From sequence record MW349128.1: a stretch of DNA of 64,000 nucleotides, one strand, 5' to 3'. This document shows positions 4,814-44,878 of the stretch, in pieces. The notes below the pieces were generated by a model, which had not been told where the DNA came from, searched no databases, and saw only the letters and a list, made by a program, of their open reading frames with translations. Both the position numbers and the translations under genes were made by a program. Within the stretch, counting starts at the first letter, position 1; the number at the start of each line of letters is the position of its first letter.

Positions 4814-7800
4814 ATGGGTCGTTTTATAAAATCAACATATTTGAATAAAAAAGAAACATCTAATAAAAAAGAGAAAGTAGTAATGGTTGTTAAGGAAGAA
4901 GATGGAACTAAGAAACATATGGAAATAGTAGATCCTATGATGCATTATTATGTAACTAAAGATGAACATTGGTTACCACCTAATATAGTTGTAGGTTCTA
5001 TGGCTAAAGAAAAAGTTAGAACTGTACACTGTAAACATAAAGATGTTATTAAATCTATAGTTAGAGAAGCAGGTAATGCTCAAGATAAATCAGAATACGA
5101 TAGAATATTATCTTCAGGTAATTATGAAGAGTTTAGAAAATTAAAAGATTTTCATTTAATGAATAATGTTCATGGATCTGATATTAATATTGAAGATTAT
5201 AATATTAATGAGTATATCAAACAAAACTTAGATAGTAAAGTTGGAATTGATATATGTCTATTTGATATAGAGGTAGATGGATCGCAAACAGTTGGGTTAA
5301 TTTAGGTAGCTCAATTAAAAAATTATTAATTGCTGAAAAGTTTAAAAATAATCAGCATCACTAATTTAGTGTTCAACGACTAAATATAATAATATAATTC
5401 AAATATACTTCCTTTATAAAAGGAGGAAAATAATGAAAGAAATATGGAAAGACATTAAAGATTTTGAAAATTACTATAAAATATCCAATACTGGTAAAGT
5501 TAAATCGGTTTCAAGATATGTATATAATGATTCTTTAAAAGGTAAAGATAAAAGAATGCTTATTAAAGAAAGAGTATTAAAAACAAGAATAAATAAAAAT
5601 GGTTATGAAGATGTTCAATTATATAGAAATAATAAGAAGCATACAAGAAGAATACACCGTTTAGTTGCAGAGAATTTTATCGAAAATAAAGATATTGATA
5701 AAAATGTAGTTAATCATATTGACGGTAATAAATTAAATAACAATTTATCTAATTTAGAATGGATGTCAGTATTAGAAAATAATTTACATGCTATAGAAAA
5801 TAATCTTCATAAAACTGATAAAATGGAAGAATCATTAAAAAAGAGAAGAAAACCAGTAGCACAAATAGATAAAGAAACAGATAAAATTATAAAAGAATAT
5901 GAAAGTGCTAAATTTGCAGCGGAAGAATTAAATATAGATAGAAAAGGAATACAAGCAGTTGCAAATGGTTATAGAAATAGTAAAACTTACAAAAATTTTA
6001 AATGGAAATATATTTGAATTTAAAAGATATAGTCTAATCTTTATACAATTGTATAAAGTTAATATAAATGTCCCTGAACCAGGAATGGCTGAAATTAATA
6101 TTATAACTGTAGTTGATTGGAGTAAACGTAAATGTTTAACATTTGCATTAAAATATGATACAGATAATTATAATGAAGTTATGACAGATAAAACTAAATT
6201 AATGGAAGATCTAAATAATATTTATAATAATAAAGATAGCGAGATTGGAGAAGATTTAGGTTTAGAATTTGAAATATATGAATTAGATACTGAAATGGAA
6301 ATTATTAAATCATTCTTATACTATATTAATGAAATTAGTAAGCCTGATATATGTACGGCTTGAGAAACACACTGGGTCGTGTAAAACCTTTTTAATTGCT
6401 GGAACGTCCTTATTGCTTAGTGAGCTACAACGTGACTGGTAACGGTGAGCGTGATATGCTTAAAAATCATTAAGATTGGATAATCAGCAGCGAAGACTCT
6501 ATAAATCCTTTTCAAGAAAGGATGATTAATATGAATTATAAACCGAAAAATAAAAAGAAAATAACCAATGAAGATTGGAAAGAAATTGTCAAAGAATTAG
6601 GTAATGATGAATATGAAGTATTAGGAGATTACCTGGGTACAAAAAACAAAATTGAAATGAAACATAAAATATGTGGAGAGACATTTTTTATGACACCAAA
6701 TAATTTTAAAATAAGTGAAAATCGTTGTCCTATCTGTTCTATAAAGAAAGTTTCAGAAAAACGTAGGAAGAAGACAAAGGAATTAAATGAAAAAATAAAA
6801 GAAGTTCTTGATGATTCTTATGAATTTAAATTGAACGGTAATGAAACTGTTCATAATAAAATAAAAGTAAAACATAAACAATGTGGAAACGAATACAGTG
6901 TTTTAATAAGACATATAATTTATGATAAAAATAAATGTAGTAAATGTCAAGATTTTGTTAATTCAAGAGATGAAAAAGAAATAAATAAATTCCTTATAGA
7001 AATGGGCGTAGATTTCGAAAGACAATATAAATTTGAAGATGACAAAGTAAAAAATCTTAGATTTGACTTTGCAGTTTTTAAAAATAACGAAATCAAACTT
7101 ATAGAATTTGATGGTGAATTTCATTTTAAAGAAAAATTTGGTGGACCAAAAGCATTTGAGAAAGTAGTATACAATGACTATCTCAAAAATAAATTTTGTT
7201 TTGACAATAACATAAAATTACTTAGAATACCTTATTGGGAAAGTAATAATAAAAAAGAAATAATAAAAAGGTTTATAGAGTAACGTTCAACGACTATCGA
7301 AAAGTGAGCATTATGTCGAGAGGACCTATTGCAATATAACTGAGTAGAGTACACTTTTAATTAAGTGGAAAAAGAAGGGTATGTAGAGTAACGTCTATAT
7401 ACAAGATATAGTCTATCTTTCAATAAAATATATTTTATTGAAATTTGTGGAATCTAGATTTTGACTTTGCAACTATATTTGAAAGAATTAAAGTTAATGG
7501 AGAAGATCCAGCTGATTATTTCTGTTCTAAAGATTTACAAGATAAAAAAGCTTATTATAGATTAGATAAAAACGCTACAGATGCAGCTAATAGATCATCT
7601 ACGTTCGAAACTAACTCATACACTAACTGGATTGACCAATTAGCTTTATATGCAAATGTAAATAAACCAAATGGTGTTATGGAATCAGTTAAGTTAAATG
7701 ATGTTGGTGAAAAAGAAACTGGTATTAAGAAAGATGTATATGAAGGATCTATCTCTGATTTACATTTTAGAGATTATTATACATTCATTCTTTATAACAT

Positions 7801-39833: not shown

Positions 39834-41387
39834 TTGGTTAATATGATTTATGATAAAAAAGATTTATCTGAGAAAGAAGTATCAACTTTATTAAGTATAA
39901 AAAAAGAAGATATTACTCTTGATAAACTTAAAGAATTATTTGCATTTAGACAAAATACACAACCAATGTTTAACCCTAGCGATAGATTTAAACTTAAAAA
40001 AGATTTAGTTTATAATAGTAAAGATGAGAGAACAACAGTTGGAAGATATATATTTAATAAATTTATATTAGACAATAAAATAGGACCTATTATAGGATAT
40101 ATGAATAAAGATATGGGAGGATCAGGTGTAGGAAATCTACAATCTGAACTATCTAGTTTATTACTTAATGATGTTATTACAACTAAAGATATGAATATGT
40201 ATATTGATAAACTTCAATGGCTCGGTTTCTCCATAGCAGGATTTATTAATTCTAGCTTAACAACTACAATGATGGTTGCTCCCGATAAAGTTAAACAAAA
40301 GAAAGAAGAATTACTAGAGAAATATGGTAAAGCATTAAATACTCCTGGTGAAGAATTGAATGCTATTAGTGCTATTGAAAAAGAATTAATTAAGTTAAGT
40401 AAGGAAGAATTAGAAGGTTTAGCAGATCTTGATATTTATGATAGTGGATCAAGAGGTAGTTTTGGAAATAACTTCAAGTTAACAGCTCTTATTCGTGGAG
40501 CAAATAAAAACTTTGCTGATCCTAGTAAAATACGTATTGCTAAGAGTTCTTTAGCTGATGGAATTGATCCAGAAGAATTATATATGTTTGGTGATATTAT
40601 GACAGCTGGTTCAGCTGGACGTGCTTTAGGTATATGAATGCCCTTTATTATAGTAATATAATAATAGAAAAATTATTAATTGCTGAGAAGATATAAACTT
40701 AATCAGCATCAATCAGAATGATTGTTCAACGACTAAATATAATTAAACTCATAAAGAGTTTTTGATATAGTCTGATCTATATTAAATTAATATAGATTAA
40801 CATAAATGACTCAAGAAGGTGGGTAAATTAGATGCTCACAATAAATTCTATTAATTGCTAGAATGTTAAAACTAACTAGCATCAACTTTATTAAGTTGTT
40901 CAACGACTAAATATAGAAATGATTAAATTCATAAGATATAGTCTAATCTATAATAAAATATAGATAATAAAATGATCAAGCTAAAAAACTTATGTCCGCT
41001 TTCCAAACAACTGTATTAGATAAACAAGGTTCTGATTGTAGAACAAAACATACATTAAAATTAACATTAACTAAAGATAATGCGAGTCTTTTATTATATA
41101 GATATTTTGAAGATACTTCAGGAAGAAAAGGTCAATTAATACTATTAACGCCTGAAAATGTGGATGAACACATGGGTAAAGTATTGAACTTCAGAAGTCC
41201 TATGTATTGTGCAAGTGAAGATATTTGTAGTAAATGTGCAGGAGAACTCCCTTACAAACTAGGTATAGAAAATATTGGACTATTGGTTAACCAAGTGGCT
41301 CAAGCAATTGTAACAAGCTCCATGAAGTCTTTCCATGATATGACAATTAAACAAAATGAAATAGATATCGAAGATTATATTTATTAA
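39834..41387 (+). CDS. rpoC: RNA polymerase beta' C-terminal-like subunit, probably virion RNAP; three exons, 408 aa
   Basis: Exons 39834-40631, 40809-40824 and 40975-41387 give GRALG|TQEGG(Y)|QAKKL (bridge helix; cf. TANSGYLTRRL); SGSRGS, DC, FRSPMYC..ICSKCAG. Confidence 0.92.
40632..40808 (+). mobile_element. ORF-less group I mini-intron D (177 nt)
   Basis: GGT|ATATGAATGCC; TTGCTGAG..AATCAGCA; GTTCAACGACTA; TGATATAGTCT; P9 ATCTATAT/ATATAGAT; terminal G40808. Confidence 0.9.
40825..40974 (+). mobile_element. ORF-less group I mini-intron E (150 nt)
   Basis: P1 GTGGGT/GCTCAC; P3 TTCTAT/ATAGAA; P4 TGCTAG/CTAGCA; P6 CAAC/GTTG; P7 GACTA/TAGTC; P8 ATGA/TCAT; P9; terminal G40974; no P2. Confidence 0.88.
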
Positions 41388-41434
41388 AAGCGTAATATAT
41401 TGAAATATAAACATATATTATAATAATGAAGAAA

Positions 41435-41504
41435 GTTTATCTAGCTCAGTTGGTAGAGCAATGATTTTCATCATGTGTCCGGGGTTCGATCCCTCGGATA
41501 AGCT
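41435..41504 (+). tRNA. tRNA-like gene with a shrunken anticodon loop (pseudo-tRNA)
   Basis: Acceptor GTTTATC/GATAAGC, D arm GCTC/GAGC, T arm CGGGG-TTCGATC-CCTCG; anticodon arm is only 14 nt (ATGAT-TTTC-ATCAT). Confidence 0.8.
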
Positions 41505-41857
41505 TTTTTTGGTCTAAAATTCTTATTTATTAAAAAATTTTATTTAAAAATATTAATTAACTATATAGTATAAATCTATAATGATCCTCGTCAAATTATT
41601 ATAGATTTTTTTTTTAGTTTTTGATTTAACTAAAAAATATAATAGATTAAATTCTATTATAACTTACTTTGTCGTTTGTTGTTGCTTTAAAAATGTTCCT
41701 TTGATTTCTTGTTTCTATTTTTAATATGTCATGGTTTTAAATAGAAATCCATACGCCTCCTTACGTATAATTAAAAATGAATAGATATTATTATATATTT
41801 ATTTACTTAAAAGAGTGCATAGATGATAAATGTACTCTTTTATTTTTTTTTTATTAA

Positions 41858-41929
41858 TGCTCTATAATTCAATGGTAGAATGCTTGACTGTTAATCAAGA
41901 GGTTGTTTGTTCGAATCAAACTAGAGCAG
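41858..41929 (+). tRNA. trnN: tRNA-Asn(GUU)
   Basis: Full cloverleaf: TGCTCTA/TAGAGCA; CTTGA-CTGTTAA-TCAAG; GTTTG-TTCGAAT-CAAAC; CCA not encoded. Confidence 0.93.
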
Positions 41930-41936
41930 TTTCTAT

Positions 41937-42039
41937 GTTCCTATAGCTCAATGGTCAGAGCGTACGGATTTCATGAATTATACCTGGATAGGATAATTTA
42001 TGGATCTGTAGGTTATGAGTTCGAATCTCATTAGGAACA
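41937..42039 (+). tRNA. tRNA-like gene whose anticodon arm is an extended hairpin of about 21 bp
   Basis: Acceptor GTTCCTA/TAGGAAC, D arm GCTC/GAGC, T arm ATGAG-TTCGAAT-CTCAT; 38 nt lie between the TACGG/CTGTA stem halves. Confidence 0.8.
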
Positions 42040-42554
42040 ACCCTATAGGATTAATCATCCTTATAGCTTGGCTGCAGACTTGCTATAAATAAAATATAAA
42101 TTGAGTGATATGCCAAACTTAATTTATTAGATTCAACTAAAGTTAAGGCATATCTTTAGTTGTAAAAAAAATAGCACATATATTTAATCTGTCAAATTAA
42201 ATATATGTATCACAACAATCATTACAGTTTTAGGTCTAATTTACGTTTAGTTATTAGATCGGAGTATTAAAGAGGACTTATTTTACATTAATTTGTGATA
42301 AGTATCTGACTTTAATACATTTTAGGTTTTCTAGTTTCTTAGTCCCTAATATAAGAAAAACTAGACTATTAAATCGCTACAAGATTCCTAATATGTTCCA
42401 TGCATATATTGGTTTCTTTAATCCTTCTTATGCTTTATGGGATATAAAAAATTATTAAAGCAACTTTATACTTTTTTCGTAAAAGTAACTATAACCCTAA
42501 CCTACAGATTGATTCCAAATTAGTCGAAGAGGTTAGGGTTATTTTATACATATT

Positions 42555-42584
42555 TCCCAATATCTAATTTAATAGATATTGGGA
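42555..42584 (+). terminator. Terminator, CCCAATACCT-family variant
   Basis: TCCCAATATCTA/TAGATATTGGGA followed by T-rich sequence. Confidence 0.8.
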
Positions 42585-42673
42585 TTATTTTTATTTTACG
42601 TTTTAAATATATATTATAAATTTGAGATTATTAAAATATAATCTTAATATTATAATATGGAGATGAATGCGAT

Positions 42674-44878
42674 ATGCTAGGTAAAAAATTAAGAGAAAGT
42701 TTTAAAGAAAAATTAGGTAATGACTATACATTTAATATAGATAATGATAAAGATTATCAAATAAATGAAGACAAAGTAAAAGTAACTTATAAAGGAAAAA
42801 TATCTGAAGAATTTAAGATAAGAATGATTAAATATACTAAAAGCAAAGAATGGCTTGATAATTATTTTGAAAGCTGTTTAAGAATAATTGACTCAGGAGA
42901 AAATGAAAATAAAGTTAACGCTGAGAAATTTTTAAAAAATAAAGAAAGAACTAAGAGACTTGAATCTCCTATGGTAGAAAACGCTAATGAATCTTTAGAA
43001 CCTTATACATTTTTCTTAAATAGCTCTACTAAAATGAAAGATAAAGTTAGATATTTAAAGAATAAAAGTAAAGAAGAAAAATATTTATTCTTCTATAATG
43101 CTACAATAGCTAAATATGGACTATATTCTCCTTATGATGTATCTAATTTTAAACCGAATAGTATAAATACTAAACAAAATATAGTATGTGAAAAACATGG
43201 TAGCTTTAAAAGTTCAGTTAAAAATTTTCTTATGAATGATCTTGATGGTTGTCCAGGTTGTAAGAAAGATGGAGAAGTGGCAACTACTGAAGATATCTTT
43301 AATAATTTAAAAGATATAGATCCTGATTTATTTTTAGAATTGACTAAAGATTACACAGAAGATGAAAAAGATCATATTTATGATTTAGCTCTAAATAAAG
43401 CTAATAATACAAACTATGATTTTTCTAAATTTAGACCCATTAACGAAAAAGATATTCAACCAATTATATGTGAAAAACATGGTGAATTTAAAACATCTAT
43501 ACATGAAATGTTATTTGATAAAAAATTAGCTTGTCCTAAATGTGAAGAAGAAAAACTTAGTATAGATAAAGACTGGGAAAAGATTGTAGAAAATAATAAA
43601 AAGAAACGTGAAGAAGAAACTGAGAAATTACTTAAGGGTATAAAGAAAACACCAAAAGCTAAAAAGAATATGAAGAAAGAAAGTATAGAAAGAGAAATTT
43701 CTAATAATTTTAATATTGATCAAGTTAATAATGTTATTAAAAGTTCAAATAAAGAACAAAAAGAAATAATTCCAGAACCAATACCAAAAATAAAGAATAA
43801 GAGAAAATATTCAGTTCAAGAATTAAAAGAGTATAAACGTATAAAGTCACTTAATACTAAGATTAAAAATCTTAATAACTTTGATTATACTGAAGAAGAA
43901 AAGACTGAAGTATATCAAACACTTGCAAATATTAAACATGGTAAAGATAAATATAATATGAGTAAATTTAGACCTAGCGATAAATATGAAAAATCAATAG
44001 TAATATGTAAAGACCATGGTGAATTTAAAATAAATGCAAATGAATTAATAGAAAAAGGTATTAATTGTCCGTCATGTAGTAATGGAAAATCATCTATTGC
44101 TGAATCAAAAGTATCTGATGAAATGAAATATTTAGGTTTTGAAATAGAAAGACAGAATAGAGATTTGTTAGATGGTAAAGAAATTGATATACTCTCTGAA
44201 GAACATAAATTGGCTATTGAAGTTAATGGAGTTAAATATCATTCTAATGAAACTAAATCTGATATAAATGCTAAGTATCATCAACTTAAGAAATACAATG
44301 AACTTAAAGAAAAGGGATACCATCTTCTTAATTTATTTGATGATGATATTCGTAATGAAACTAAAAGAATTGATGGTAAGAATTATGCTAAATTCTTACA
44401 TCAATTGTTACTATTTAAAGATGATTATTCCGTATTAGACTATGGTGGTATAAAAATTAAATCTATGGGATTCTTTACATTTAAAGATTTCTTTGAAAAT
44501 CATTCAACAGAAGACTTTTATGGAAAAGATTCTGACTTCTTCGCTCTTTATTATAAAGGTTATATTATTTGTGCATTTTCTTTTAATAATAAGACTAATG
44601 TATCACATAATTTTATTTCACTTTTAAATACAGACGCAGATTTAATTAAAATTAAGAAGGTATTTCCAGGTTTAACTTTTAACGTAAAATCTGATTCATA
44701 TACATGTTATAAATTTGAAAAATTTGGAATGTATAAAGTAGGTAATGAATTACCTATTGAAAAGACTTTCTTAAAAGGTACAAGTAATGATAGCTATATA
44801 AGAAATAAGATTGATAAAAATAAAACTTATATAAATAAAGTATATGATACAGGTTCGACTAATTTTATATTTGAATGA
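42674..44878 (+). CDS. Free-standing putative homing endonuclease (Hef-like: repeated C-x-x-HG..CPxC modules plus PD-(D/E)xK-like domain)
   Basis: Three modules: CEKHGSF..CPGC, CEKHGEF..CPKC, CKDHGEF..CPSC; EIDILSEEHKLAIEVNGVKYHS. Confidence 0.75.
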   Translation: MLGKKLRESFKEKLGNDYTFNIDNDKDYQINEDKVKVTYKGKISEEFKIRMIKYTKSKEWLDNYFESCLRIIDSGENENKVNAEKFLKNKERTKRLESPMVENANESLEPYTFFLNSSTKMKDKVRYLKNKSKEEKYLFFYNATIAKYGLYSPYDVSNFKPNSINTKQNIVCEKHGSFKSSVKNFLMNDLDGCPGCKKDGEVATTEDIFNNLKDIDPDLFLELTKDYTEDEKDHIYDLALNKANNTNYDFSKFRPINEKDIQPIICEKHGEFKTSIHEMLFDKKLACPKCEEEKLSIDKDWEKIVENNKKKREEETEKLLKGIKKTPKAKKNMKKESIEREISNNFNIDQVNNVIKSSNKEQKEIIPEPIPKIKNKRKYSVQELKEYKRIKSLNTKIKNLNNFDYTEEEKTEVYQTLANIKHGKDKYNMSKFRPSDKYEKSIVICKDHGEFKINANELIEKGINCPSCSNGKSSIAESKVSDEMKYLGFEIERQNRDLLDGKEIDILSEEHKLAIEVNGVKYHSNETKSDINAKYHQLKKYNELKEKGYHLLNLFDDDIRNETKRIDGKNYAKFLHQLLLFKDDYSVLDYGGIKIKSMGFFTFKDFFENHSTEDFYGKDSDFFALYYKGYIICAFSFNNKTNVSHNFISLLNTDADLIKIKKVFPGLTFNVKSDSYTCYKFEKFGMYKVGNELPIEKTFLKGTSNDSYIRNKIDKNKTYINKVYDTGSTNFIFE

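What the first reader, a model, noticed from the sequence alone, without database searches (positions are those of the whole stretch)
41937..42039. tRNA-like RNA whose anticodon arm is a long, nearly perfect hairpin
Seen: TACGGAT/ATCTGTA continues into TCATGAATTAT/ATAATTTATGG and CCT-GGAT-AGG, about 21 bp capped by a tetraloop with no anticodon loop. It starts 7 nt after a normal tRNA-Asn. The insert is too short for a group I or II intron. Together with the 41435 element, two of three tRNA genes have independently lost a readable anticodon. Inference: a class of anticodon-less tRNA mimics (anti-defence or translation modulators), or a tRNA with an unknown removable insert.
Basis: partly seen in the sequence, partly recalled or inferred. 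Interest (0 to 1): 0.75.

Follow-up and report, generated by a model that had tools for sequence, protein, structure and literature searches.

The report
tRNA-shaped head of phage ncRNA
The odd "tRNA" is real, but it is not a decoder: it is the tRNA-shaped front end of a conserved, so far unannotated, structured non-coding RNA found in all ten known Staphylococcus jumbo phages of this group. The long hairpin is a lineage-specific lengthening of an arm that no member uses as an anticodon loop.

Summary
Window 41937-42039 (Staphylococcus jumbo phage Machias) scores 54.7 bits on the Rfam tRNA model. Its anticodon arm is a 48-nt, 21-bp hairpin capped by GGAU, and it starts 7 nt after tRNA-Asn.

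Comparison changes the interpretation. An orthologous tRNA-shaped element sits at the same place in all 10 related Staphylococcus jumbo phages, whereas the genuine tRNA-Asn survives in only 5. No member has a normal 7-nt anticodon loop: the arms are 7 bp with a 5-nt loop, 6 bp with a 6-nt loop, 30 nt, or 48 nt. The acceptor, anticodon and T stems keep pairing through compensatory changes.

The element is always fused to a conserved four-hairpin RNA (42047-42162). This RNA has invariant loops, two of which are 7-nt complementary. Across the whole structure, 23 of 62 pairs covary.

The element is therefore neither a decaying tRNA nor an intron-bearing tRNA. It is the non-decoding tRNA-like domain of a new phage ncRNA. 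Its most likely role, which is inferred, is as an RNase P/RNase Z processing, folding and end-protection module. The anticodon arm would then be a peripheral helix free to change length. Function is untested, and a decoy role is not excluded.

The parts
41858..41929 (+). Genuine tRNA-Asn(GUU), 7 nt upstream of the tRNA-like domain. It is present in only 5 of the 10 related phages.
   Evidence: ARAGORN and Rfam at 72.1 bits. Presence/absence in relatives.
41937..42039 (+). tRNA-like domain. Acceptor stem 41937-41943 with 42032-42038, D arm 41946-41961, anticodon arm 41963-42010, T arm 42015-42031, discriminator A42039. No CCA is encoded.
   Evidence: Rfam RF00005 at 54.7 bits and cloverleaf MFE with z -5.0. 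Orthologues occur in all 10 phages, with compensatory changes in the acceptor (3 pairs), anticodon (4 pairs) and T (1 pair) stems.
41963..42010 (+). Extended anticodon arm: 21 bp, two 1-nt bulges (both on the 5' strand), GGAU loop at 41986-41989. Only Machias and PB50 have this length. AH12 has a 30-nt arm and the other 7 phages have 18-19-nt arms.
   Evidence: (z -5.7) and alignment A1. The sequence is unique in the window and in the phage collection.
42047..42061 (+). Hairpin P1: 5 bp with a 5-nt loop. Stem and loop are identical in all 10 phages.
42062..42087 (+). Hairpin P2: an 8-9-bp stem with 6 covarying pairs. The invariant 8-nt loop (42071-42078) contains a 6-nt palindrome.
42096..42127 (+). 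Hairpin P3: an 11-bp stem with 5 covarying pairs and a 10-nt loop at 42107-42116.
42134..42162 (+). Hairpin P4: a 9-bp stem with 4 covarying pairs and an 11-nt loop at 42143-42153.
42108..42153 (+). Loop-loop complementarity: 42108-42114 (P3 loop) is the exact complement of 42147-42153 (P4 loop), 7 nt. It is invariant apart from one A-U to G-U change in SA1. It could form a kissing interaction within one molecule or between molecules.
   Evidence: helix 8: 6 of 7 pairs never vary, 1 varies on one side, 100% paired. Chance of a complement of 7 nt or more between two such loops is 0.002-0.004.
42327..42366 (+). A further hairpin whose stem sequence is shared by all 10 phages. It lies between P4 and the terminator.
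   Evidence: Alignment. No formal covariation test was done.
42495..42597 (+). End of the non-coding unit. The first terminator-like hairpin (42495-42503 with 42530-42538, plus a U-rich tail to 42547) is shared with the S6 group. A second one (42555-42584 plus a T-run) is specific to the Machias lineage.
   Evidence: The next gene has its own early-promoter 13-mer at 42605-42617, identical to the early promoter annotated in AR9.

Best explanation
41937-42039 is the non-decoding, tRNA-shaped 5' domain of a conserved structured non-coding RNA of the MarsHill/S6-type Staphylococcus jumbo phages. SHOWN: the domain keeps what makes a tRNA an L-shaped object. It has a 7-bp acceptor stem, a 5-bp anticodon stem, a T arm with a standard T loop, GG in the D loop, U8 and A14, a U just before the first base, and an A discriminator. 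No family member keeps a 7-nt anticodon loop. The domain is always followed, 6-8 nt later, by the same four hairpins (P1-P4). SHOWN: in the Machias/PB50 lineage the arm is 48 nt. Compared with AH12, the extra bases lie on both strands and pair with each other, so the helix was lengthened, not interrupted. INFERRED: the tRNA shape serves as a handle for the host's tRNA end-processing enzymes and as a stable folded end. RNase P would cut at G41937, freeing the RNA from tRNA-Asn or the leader. RNase Z might or might not cut after A42039, so the four-hairpin RNA would either be released with a defined 5' end or keep a tRNA-shaped, exonuclease-resistant cap. Those enzymes read the acceptor/T-arm stack and the elbow, not the anticodon loop. 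That would explain why exactly this loop is free to shrink or grow. The 21-bp hairpin itself would then have no codon-related role. It is long enough to be a double-strand-specific RNase substrate, but that is speculation.
For: The window is phage Machias. An orthologous element is present in 10 of 10 related phages, against 5 of 10 for tRNA-Asn. The structure is 97.3% paired, and 23 of 62 pairs have changes on both sides. Slid controls give 31-40% paired and 0-4 such pairs, and 0 of 500 shuffles reach the observed values. RNAalifold finds the same cloverleaf plus P1-P4 on its own. There are 23 G.U cells against 3 A.C cells, so the RNA is read from the + strand. The non-coding segment is 77-83% identical between clades. 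That equals the virion RNA polymerase gene next door (80-84%) and exceeds the downstream gene (about 70%). Anticodon arms differ in every clade. The base at -1 is T in all 10 phages. There is no conserved ORF on either strand. There is one copy per genome, unannotated. The unit has its own terminator, and the next gene has its own promoter. From my knowledge of the families: RNase P, RNase Z and the CCA-adding enzyme recognise the acceptor/T-arm half of tRNA.
Against: No transcript data exist for any of these phages, so neither the RNA nor its ends are shown. The anticodon stem itself is conserved with covariation, which a pure RNase P/Z handle would not need. No promoter could be placed with confidence. 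In several phages a terminator-like hairpin lies a few nt upstream of the element. The base after the discriminator is A or C, often followed by C. From memory of Bacillus work, that is not the context RNase Z prefers. Only three clades exist, so the number of independent covariation events is small.
Confidence: 0.5

Rival explanations
1. Stand-alone tRNA mimic or decoy. The tRNA-shaped RNA, processed free of its neighbours, would bind and titrate a host factor that recognises tRNA shape. Candidates are a defence nuclease, a modification or repair enzyme, or a Ro-like protein. The anticodon arm would vary because it is the contact surface in an arms race.
For: The full L-shape, including the anticodon stem, is conserved, while the arm tip differs in each clade. 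A second, unrelated anticodon-less element of tRNA-Lys type has its own promoter-like 13-mer and T-run in the same three phages. Phage tRNAs are known to interact with tRNA-targeting defences (PMC10264068, listed; title and abstract only).
Against: An anticodon nuclease decoy should display an anticodon-like loop, but here the loop is closed or replaced by a helix. The constant fusion to P1-P4 is not explained. No Ro/TROVE, RNA ligase or similar partner appears in the published gene tables. The Rfam YrlA model scores 18.5 bits against a threshold of 69.
Confidence: 0.2
2. Neutral decay: a phage tRNA gene that has lost its function and is drifting. This is the published view of tRNA genes in these phages (bioRxiv 10.1101/2020.12.14.422802). 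The DC4 paper lists the orthologue as a 'pseudo-tRNA Leu' (PMC10638138).
For: Searches give the published statements. The S6-group orthologue no longer reaches the Rfam tRNA threshold, even at E<=1. Arm length varies. The surrounding locus is indel-rich.
Against: The element is retained in 10 of 10 genomes, while the intact tRNA-Asn beside it was lost in 5. Compensatory changes occur in three stems. Its identity between clades equals that of an essential polymerase gene. All 4 substitutions at paired positions that separate Machias from PB50 keep a standard pair.
Confidence: 0.1
3. A working tRNA with a short removable insert (an unknown intron type) that is spliced to give a normal anticodon loop.
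For: The first seven bases after the 5-bp stem look like an anticodon loop with U at position 33. The insert sits inside the loop.
Against: There is no bulge-helix-bulge motif: the only bulges are two 1-nt bulges on the same strand, 10 bp apart. The 31-34-nt insert is far too small for a group I or II intron, and no Rfam intron hit exists here. Positions 34-36 read UUC, UUU and UUA in three phages that are 93-99% identical here. Orthologues without the insert have 5-, 6- or 8-nt loops and G or A at position 33. From my knowledge, bacteria have no tRNA splicing endonuclease.
Confidence: 0.03
4. A DNA-level signal rather than an RNA: promoter, operator or packaging/replication site. For example, the late-promoter pattern AACA(N6)TW overlaps the 3' end of the element.
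For: The AACA-N6-TA pattern fits at 42035-42046 in 8 of 10 phages (motif quoted). The region contains many inverted repeats.
Against: G.U pairs outnumber A.C by 23 to 3, which a double-stranded DNA signal would not favour. The cloverleaf has tRNA tertiary-contact bases. The spacing of the promoter-like pattern is off by one in 2 phages. A 6-base pattern is expected often by chance in 25% GC DNA.
Confidence: 0.05

Closest known systems
tRNA-like processing modules attached to longer non-coding RNAs: the mascRNA element of vertebrate MALAT1/MEN-beta, and the tRNA-like/hairpin units (TMERs) of a murine gammaherpesvirus (from my knowledge, not tested here)
   Same: A cloverleaf with good acceptor and T arms but no conserved anticodon loop. 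It directly abuts other conserved structured RNA. It is thought to work as a handle for RNase P and/or RNase Z and is not charged.
   Different: Those are eukaryotic or eukaryotic-virus RNAs. In MALAT1 the tRNA-like part is at the 3' end. In TMERs it also carries a polymerase III promoter and the hairpins feed the microRNA pathway. Here the host is a bacterium, the module is at the 5' end, and processing is not shown.
GOLLD and ROOL: large structured RNAs of phages and prophages
   Same: They are phage-encoded, unannotated by gene callers and typically next to tRNA genes. Their conserved loop-loop (kissing) contacts build multimers (bioRxiv 10.1101/2024.12.08.627333). Long non-coding RNAs next to tRNA genes have also been reported in Staphylococcus phage K (PMC9241854).
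   Different: There is no Rfam match to either family at gathering threshold or at E<=10. The conserved core here is only about 230 nt. The tRNA-like part is an integral, co-varying domain, not a neighbouring gene. Multimerisation is only suggested by loop sequences.
YrlA / bacterial Y RNAs (tRNA-mimicking partner of Ro/Rsr)
   Same: A tRNA mimic in which a long helix takes the place of the anticodon loop. It also occurs in some phages (PMC7824862).
   Different: The topology is permuted: in YrlA the RNA ends are in the long helix, here they are in the acceptor stem (from my knowledge). Rfam YrlA scores 18.5 bits against a threshold of 69. No Ro/TROVE gene is reported for these phages.
Ordinary phage tRNA genes and 'pseudo-tRNAs'
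   Same: It passes the Rfam tRNA threshold at 54.7 bits. It sits in a tRNA cluster. Orthologues were annotated as tRNA-Ser (SA1) and pseudo-tRNA-Leu (DC4).
   Different: No member has a usable anticodon loop. It is more conserved than the real tRNA next to it, and it is fused to P1-P4.
Intron-containing tRNAs (archaeal/eukaryal bulge-helix-bulge type; bacterial group I type)
   Same: Extra sequence inside the anticodon loop that pairs with the loop bases.
   Different: There is no bulge-helix-bulge motif and no group I core. The host lacks the splicing enzyme. Insert-free relatives have no normal loop either.

Membership tests
tRNA (Rfam RF00005), as a fold | Cloverleaf with a 7-bp acceptor stem, D arm, T arm with a standard T loop, and elbow bases | tested here: met
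   54.7 bits against a gathering score of 29. Cloverleaf MFE. Stems covary. Note that the S6-group orthologues do not reach the threshold.
tRNA, as a decoder | 7-nt anticodon loop with U33 and a readable, conserved anticodon | tested here: not met
   The loop is replaced by a 21-bp helix with a 4-nt loop. ARAGORN does not call it. Orthologues have 5-, 6- or 8-nt loops, and positions 34-36 differ among near-identical phages.
tRNA, as a decoder | CCA addition and aminoacylation | not testable with these tools
   No CCA is encoded. There is no G3:U70 pair, no long variable arm and no extra 5' G that would allow anticodon-independent charging (read, interpreted from my knowledge of identity rules).
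tRNA with a bulge-helix-bulge intron | Two 3-nt bulges separated by a 4-bp helix at the junctions | tested here: not met
   The only bulges are two 1-nt bulges, on the same strand and 10 bp apart.
tRNA with a bulge-helix-bulge intron | Insert-free relatives carry a normal anticodon loop | tested here: not met
tRNA with a group I intron | Intron of about 200 nt or more with a P1-P9 catalytic core | tested here: not met
   The insert is 31-34 nt and there is no Rfam intron hit at 41380-42700 at E<=10.
YrlA / Y RNA | Match to the family model | tested here: not met
   18.5 bits against a gathering score of 69. The match spans tRNA-Asn and half of the element.
YrlA / Y RNA | Ro/Rsr (TROVE) partner gene in the genome | tested here: inconclusive
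   It is not mentioned in the genome papers' texts or gene tables. The full genome was not scanned.
GOLLD / ROOL | Match to the family models | tested here: not met
   No hit at gathering score over the window or at E<=10 over the locus.
GOLLD / ROOL | Phage-encoded, next to tRNA genes, with conserved loop-loop contacts | tested here: met
   This is a resemblance in context only.
tmRNA | tRNA-like ends plus a tag reading frame | tested here: not met
   ARAGORN finds no tmRNA and Rfam gives no hit.
tRNA-like processing handle linked to an ncRNA (mascRNA/TMER type) | tRNA-like fold without a conserved anticodon loop, directly abutting conserved structured RNA | tested here: met
tRNA-like processing handle linked to an ncRNA (mascRNA/TMER type) | Cleavage by RNase P and/or RNase Z at the tRNA-like borders | not testable with these tools
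   Only indirect evidence: U at -1 in 10 of 10 phages, G1-C72, an A discriminator and no encoded CCA.

The most novel reading that the evidence does not exclude
The tRNA-shaped domain heads a previously undescribed phage RNA that self-assembles. Assembly would use its invariant palindromic P2 loop and the 7-nt complementary P3/P4 loops, as GOLLD, ROOL and OLE do. The resulting multimer would display several tRNA-shaped modules that capture or titrate a host tRNA-binding factor during infection. The variable anticodon arm would be the outward-facing spoke.
Probability: 0.1. Interest if true: 0.8.

Novelty: new variant of a known kind. Interest (0 to 1): 0.55.

Why it matters
These phages were reported to have 'degenerating' tRNA genes. 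The comparison shows the opposite for this element. It is the best-kept non-coding sequence of the locus and part of a structured RNA that no annotation, paper or Rfam family covers. It adds a bacterial-virus example to the short list of tRNA-shaped modules used for something other than decoding. It also provides a compact RNA (about 230 nt) with strong covariation and predicted loop-loop contacts, suitable for structural study. In practical terms, it warns that 'tRNA-Ser', 'pseudo-tRNA-Leu' and 'no tRNA' in the ten genome records all refer to one orthologous non-decoding element.

Tried and rejected
- **Mobile or repeated insert.** The arm sequence is unique in the window and in 50,697 phage records apart from Machias and PB50.
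- **More relatives by DNA pattern.** Two conserved motifs gave no hits in IMG/VR. One motif gave 30 metagenome and 23 GTDB hits, all chance matches lacking the neighbouring motifs.
- **More relatives through the neighbouring polymerase gene.** IMG/VR gave nothing. The protein database gave a 70% relative on a 24.5-kb contig and two short contigs. My covariance model R1 finds only a real tRNA-Asn there, upstream of the gene, and no P1-P4.
- **Syntenic site in distant relatives.** AR9 and BpSp have only short spacers (about 100 and 136 nt) after the orthologous polymerase gene. LPJP1 has an ORF-less group II intron there. The full AR9, PBS1 and LPJP1 genomes were not scanned with R1.
- **tRNA identity of the body.** The 3' piece and the SA1 orthologue were searched separately, and the insert was not cut out. 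Both hit a mix of Arg, Lys, Leu and Gly tRNAs, so no identity can be assigned.
- **Ro/TROVE, RNA ligase or CCA-enzyme partner.** None appears in the published descriptions. The LPJP1 'ribonuclease BN' is a metallo-beta-lactamase-fold hydrolase shared with SPO1-like phages and is not informative.
- **Promoter assignment.** Sigma-70-like matches are no more frequent than in shuffles. The 8-mer early motif is not enriched in the window. I could not place the start of the unit.
- **DC4 'tRNA-Phe' as a second long-armed tRNA.** The 94-nt feature lies in protein-like sequence and has no Rfam tRNA hit, so it is probably a false call.

Full report
**Source and context.** The window is 100% identical to Staphylococcus phage Machias (MW349128.1, 274 kb). 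Window position 1 corresponds to about record position 124,001. Machias is an AR9/PBS1-like jumbo phage with two multisubunit RNA polymerases and about 25% GC.

The finding lies in a 1.3-kb non-coding stretch. On one side is the gene for the middle part of the virion RNA polymerase beta' subunit, annotated in two exons and ending at 41387. On the other is a gene at 42674-44878. That gene shares a zinc-finger plus endonuclease region with the Hef-like homing endonuclease at the same place in AR9 (35% over 120 residues).

The GenBank record marks 41434-41505 and 41858-41929 as pseudo 'tRNA-Asn' and leaves 41937-42039 unannotated.

**The observation.** It is correct in every detail.
- The Rfam tRNA model matches 41937-42039 over its full length at 54.7 bits (threshold 29), with a 34-nt insertion in the anticodon loop. 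ARAGORN misses it.
- The minimum-energy fold is a cloverleaf. Its anticodon arm (41963-42010) has 21 base pairs, two one-base bulges on the 5' strand and a GGAU loop.
- The z-score is -5.0 for the element and -5.7 for the arm alone.
- A normal tRNA-Asn(GUU) ends 7 nt upstream.

**What comparison shows.** Ten Staphylococcus jumbo phages in the phage collection share this locus: Machias, PB50, AH12, SA1, Madawaska, MarsHill, PALS_2, DC4, S6 and LY01.

Every one has a tRNA-shaped element at the same position. The true tRNA-Asn is present in only five of them, and in the others it is cleanly absent.

Anticodon arms by lineage:

| Phages | Anticodon arm | Previous label |
|---|---|---|
| S6 group (6 phages) | 7 bp with a 5-nt loop, or 5 bp with a 7-nt loop having G or A at position 33 | 'pseudo-tRNA Leu' in the DC4 paper (PMC10638138); below the Rfam tRNA threshold |
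| SA1 | 6 bp with a 6-nt loop | 'tRNA-Ser' |
| AH12 | 30 nt | unannotated |
| Machias, PB50 | 48 nt | unannotated |

So no member has a canonical anticodon loop. Counting from the 5-bp stem, positions 34-36 read UUC in Machias, UUU in PB50 and UUA in AH12. These three phages are 93-99% identical here. A decoder would not behave that way.

Relative to AH12, the extra bases of Machias lie on both strands of the arm and pair with each other. The helix has been lengthened, not interrupted.

The arm sequence is unique in the window and in the collection, so it is not a mobile insert.

**Conservation of the tRNA shape.** In an alignment of the nine distinct sequences (A1):
- The acceptor stem has 3 pairs with changes on both sides, the anticodon stem has 4, and the T stem has 1.
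- U8, A14, the GG of the D loop and the T-loop bases are kept.
- The base before the first nucleotide is T in all ten phages.

**A larger RNA.** Six to eight nucleotides after the discriminator, all ten phages carry the same four hairpins (window coordinates):
- P1, 42047-42061: stem and loop invariant.
- P2, 42062-42087: 6 covarying pairs and an invariant 8-nt loop containing a 6-nt palindrome.
- P3, 42096-42127: 5 covarying pairs.
- P4, 42134-42162: 4 covarying pairs.

Seven bases of the P3 loop are the exact complement of seven bases of the P4 loop. All 7 pairs are kept in every sequence, with a single A-U to G-U change in SA1. The chance of such a complement is 0.002-0.004.

Over the whole structure:
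- 97.3% of cells are paired, and 23 of 62 pairs have changes on both sides.
- Slid controls give 31-40% paired and 0-4 such pairs. No shuffle out of 500 reaches the observed values.
- RNAalifold, given only the alignment, predicts the same cloverleaf plus P1-P4.
- G.U pairs outnumber A.C by 23 to 3, which fits an RNA read from the + strand.

Between clades this segment is 77-83% identical. That matches the polymerase gene beside it (80-84%) and exceeds the downstream gene (about 70%).

There is no conserved ORF on either strand. No Rfam family other than tRNA matches. There is one copy per genome.

Further conserved hairpins follow (for example 42327-42366). The unit ends at a terminator-like hairpin shared with the S6 group (stem 42495-42503 with 42530-42538). 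After that comes a 13-mer identical to the early promoter annotated in AR9, which serves the next gene.

**Interpretation.** The element is the non-decoding tRNA-like 5' domain of a conserved, undescribed phage non-coding RNA. That much rests on tool results.

How it works is inference. The parts that are kept (acceptor/T-arm stack, elbow, U at -1, A discriminator, no encoded CCA) are what RNase P, RNase Z and the CCA-adding enzyme read. The part that varies is the one they ignore. I therefore think the tRNA shape acts as a processing handle and a stable folded end for the attached RNA.

In this model RNase P would separate it from tRNA-Asn or the leader at 41937. Whether RNase Z also cuts after 42039 is open. 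On this reading the 21-bp hairpin of Machias has no codon-related role. It is a peripheral helix that tolerates length change.

Three weak points remain:
- There are no transcript data.
- The anticodon stem is conserved beyond what a pure handle needs.
- I could not place the promoter. In several phages a terminator-like hairpin lies just upstream.

**Rivals.**
It does not explain the fusion to P1-P4 or the closed loop.
- *Neutral decay.* This is the published view (bioRxiv 10.1101/2020.12.14.422802). It is contradicted by retention in 10 of 10 genomes and by the covariation.
- *Removable insert.* This is contradicted by the absence of a bulge-helix-bulge motif, the small size, the changing bases at positions 34-36, and the abnormal loops of insert-free relatives.
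- *DNA-level signal.* The late-promoter pattern AACA(N6)TW fits at 42035-42046 in 8 of 10 phages. This is weak because of the G.U excess and the tRNA tertiary bases.

**Distribution.** The family is confined, as far as I could see, to these ten phages.
- Motif scans of IMG/VR, JGI metagenomes and GTDB genomes gave nothing or chance hits.
- Searching through the neighbouring polymerase gene found a 70% relative in which a real tRNA-Asn lies upstream of that gene, with no P1-P4.
- AR9, BpSp and LPJP1 lack the element at the syntenic site.

**Comparison with known systems.** In mode of action the closest are tRNA-like handles attached to longer non-coding RNAs (mascRNA of MALAT1, and the tRNA-like/hairpin units of a murine gammaherpesvirus). 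Both comparisons come from my knowledge.

In context it recalls GOLLD and ROOL. These are phage RNAs found near tRNA genes that multimerise through kissing loops (bioRxiv 10.1101/2024.12.08.627333).

It is a member of none of these. Rfam gives no hit to GOLLD or ROOL, and YrlA scores 18.5 bits against a threshold of 69.

I rate it a new variant of a known kind, with moderate interest. The conserved RNA behind it is the real finding.

Noticed in passing
window 41435-41505 (+): A second anticodon-less element, with a tRNA-Lys(UUU)-type body. Its D and T arms are nearly identical to a mycobacteriophage tRNA-Lys, but its anticodon arm is 14 nt instead of 17 (5 bp with a 4-nt loop). It is 100% identical in Machias, PB50 and AH12 and absent from the other seven phages. 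It has a 12/13 match to the AR9 early-promoter 13-mer at about 41409-41421 and a T-run directly after it. It is unrelated to the 41937 element (21 bits on model R1).
   Followed up: partly
window 41751-41768 (+), and the S6-group loci about 120 nt upstream of their tRNA-Asn: A small hairpin whose loop reads CCUCCU. It is kept between the Machias and S6 groups with a different stem sequence and is followed by a conserved TATAAT-like hexamer. On the other strand the same bases would be a ribosome-binding-site-like AGGAGG, but no conserved ORF follows.
   Followed up: no
window 41988-41997 versus 42045-42055: The tip of the extended anticodon arm repeats, with one 1-nt gap, the 11 bases that form the 5' side of hairpin P1. 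This could be chance, a trace of how the arm grew, or an alternative pairing partner for the 3' side of P1.
   Followed up: no
window 42035-42046 (+): The AR9 late-promoter pattern AACA(N6)TW fits across the 3' end of the tRNA-like domain in 8 of 10 phages. Transcripts would then start at the foot of P1. It is a short pattern and may well be chance.
   Followed up: partly
window 39834-41387 (+): The virion RNA polymerase beta'-mid gene is split into two ORFs (39834-40637 and 40992-41387), annotated as two exons. The gap gives only sub-threshold Rfam group I intron hits (24.9 and 23.8 bits, threshold 50). In Listeria phage LPJP1 the orthologous gene carries an ORF-less group II intron instead (L064 about 5227-5822, 66 bits on domain V/VI).
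   Followed up: partly
loci L003, L004, L006, L008, L010 versus L001, L002, L005, L007, L009: tRNA-Asn is present in some phages and cleanly absent in others. In DC4 a Hef-like homing endonuclease gene has been inserted immediately upstream of the tRNA-like domain. The locus is an indel hot spot around an unchanging RNA.
   Followed up: partly
L006 1421-1531 (-), MarsHill gp163: An annotated 36-residue hypothetical protein lies antisense to the tRNA-like domain. The ORF is not conserved in the other phages, because arm-length differences shift the frame. It is probably a spurious call.
   Followed up: partly
L067 1144-1237 (-), DC4 'tRNA-Phe': The 94-nt tRNA-Phe reported for DC4 lies in sequence that reads like a protein-coding region and has no Rfam tRNA hit at E<=0.1. 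It is probably a false positive.
   Followed up: yes
L070 4754-4934 (+), ENA contig k141_8599: In an unnamed metagenomic relative (polymerase protein 70% identical), a tRNA-Asn(GUU) lies upstream of the beta'-mid gene instead of downstream. It is followed by unrelated hairpins and a terminator.
   Followed up: partly
window 42210-42320 (+): Between P4 and the conserved hairpin at 42327 lie two more hairpin blocks. One shows compensatory changes between Machias and SA1. They are present in most phages, but Madawaska lacks both and AH12 lacks the first, so they look like optional modules of the same RNA.
   Followed up: no
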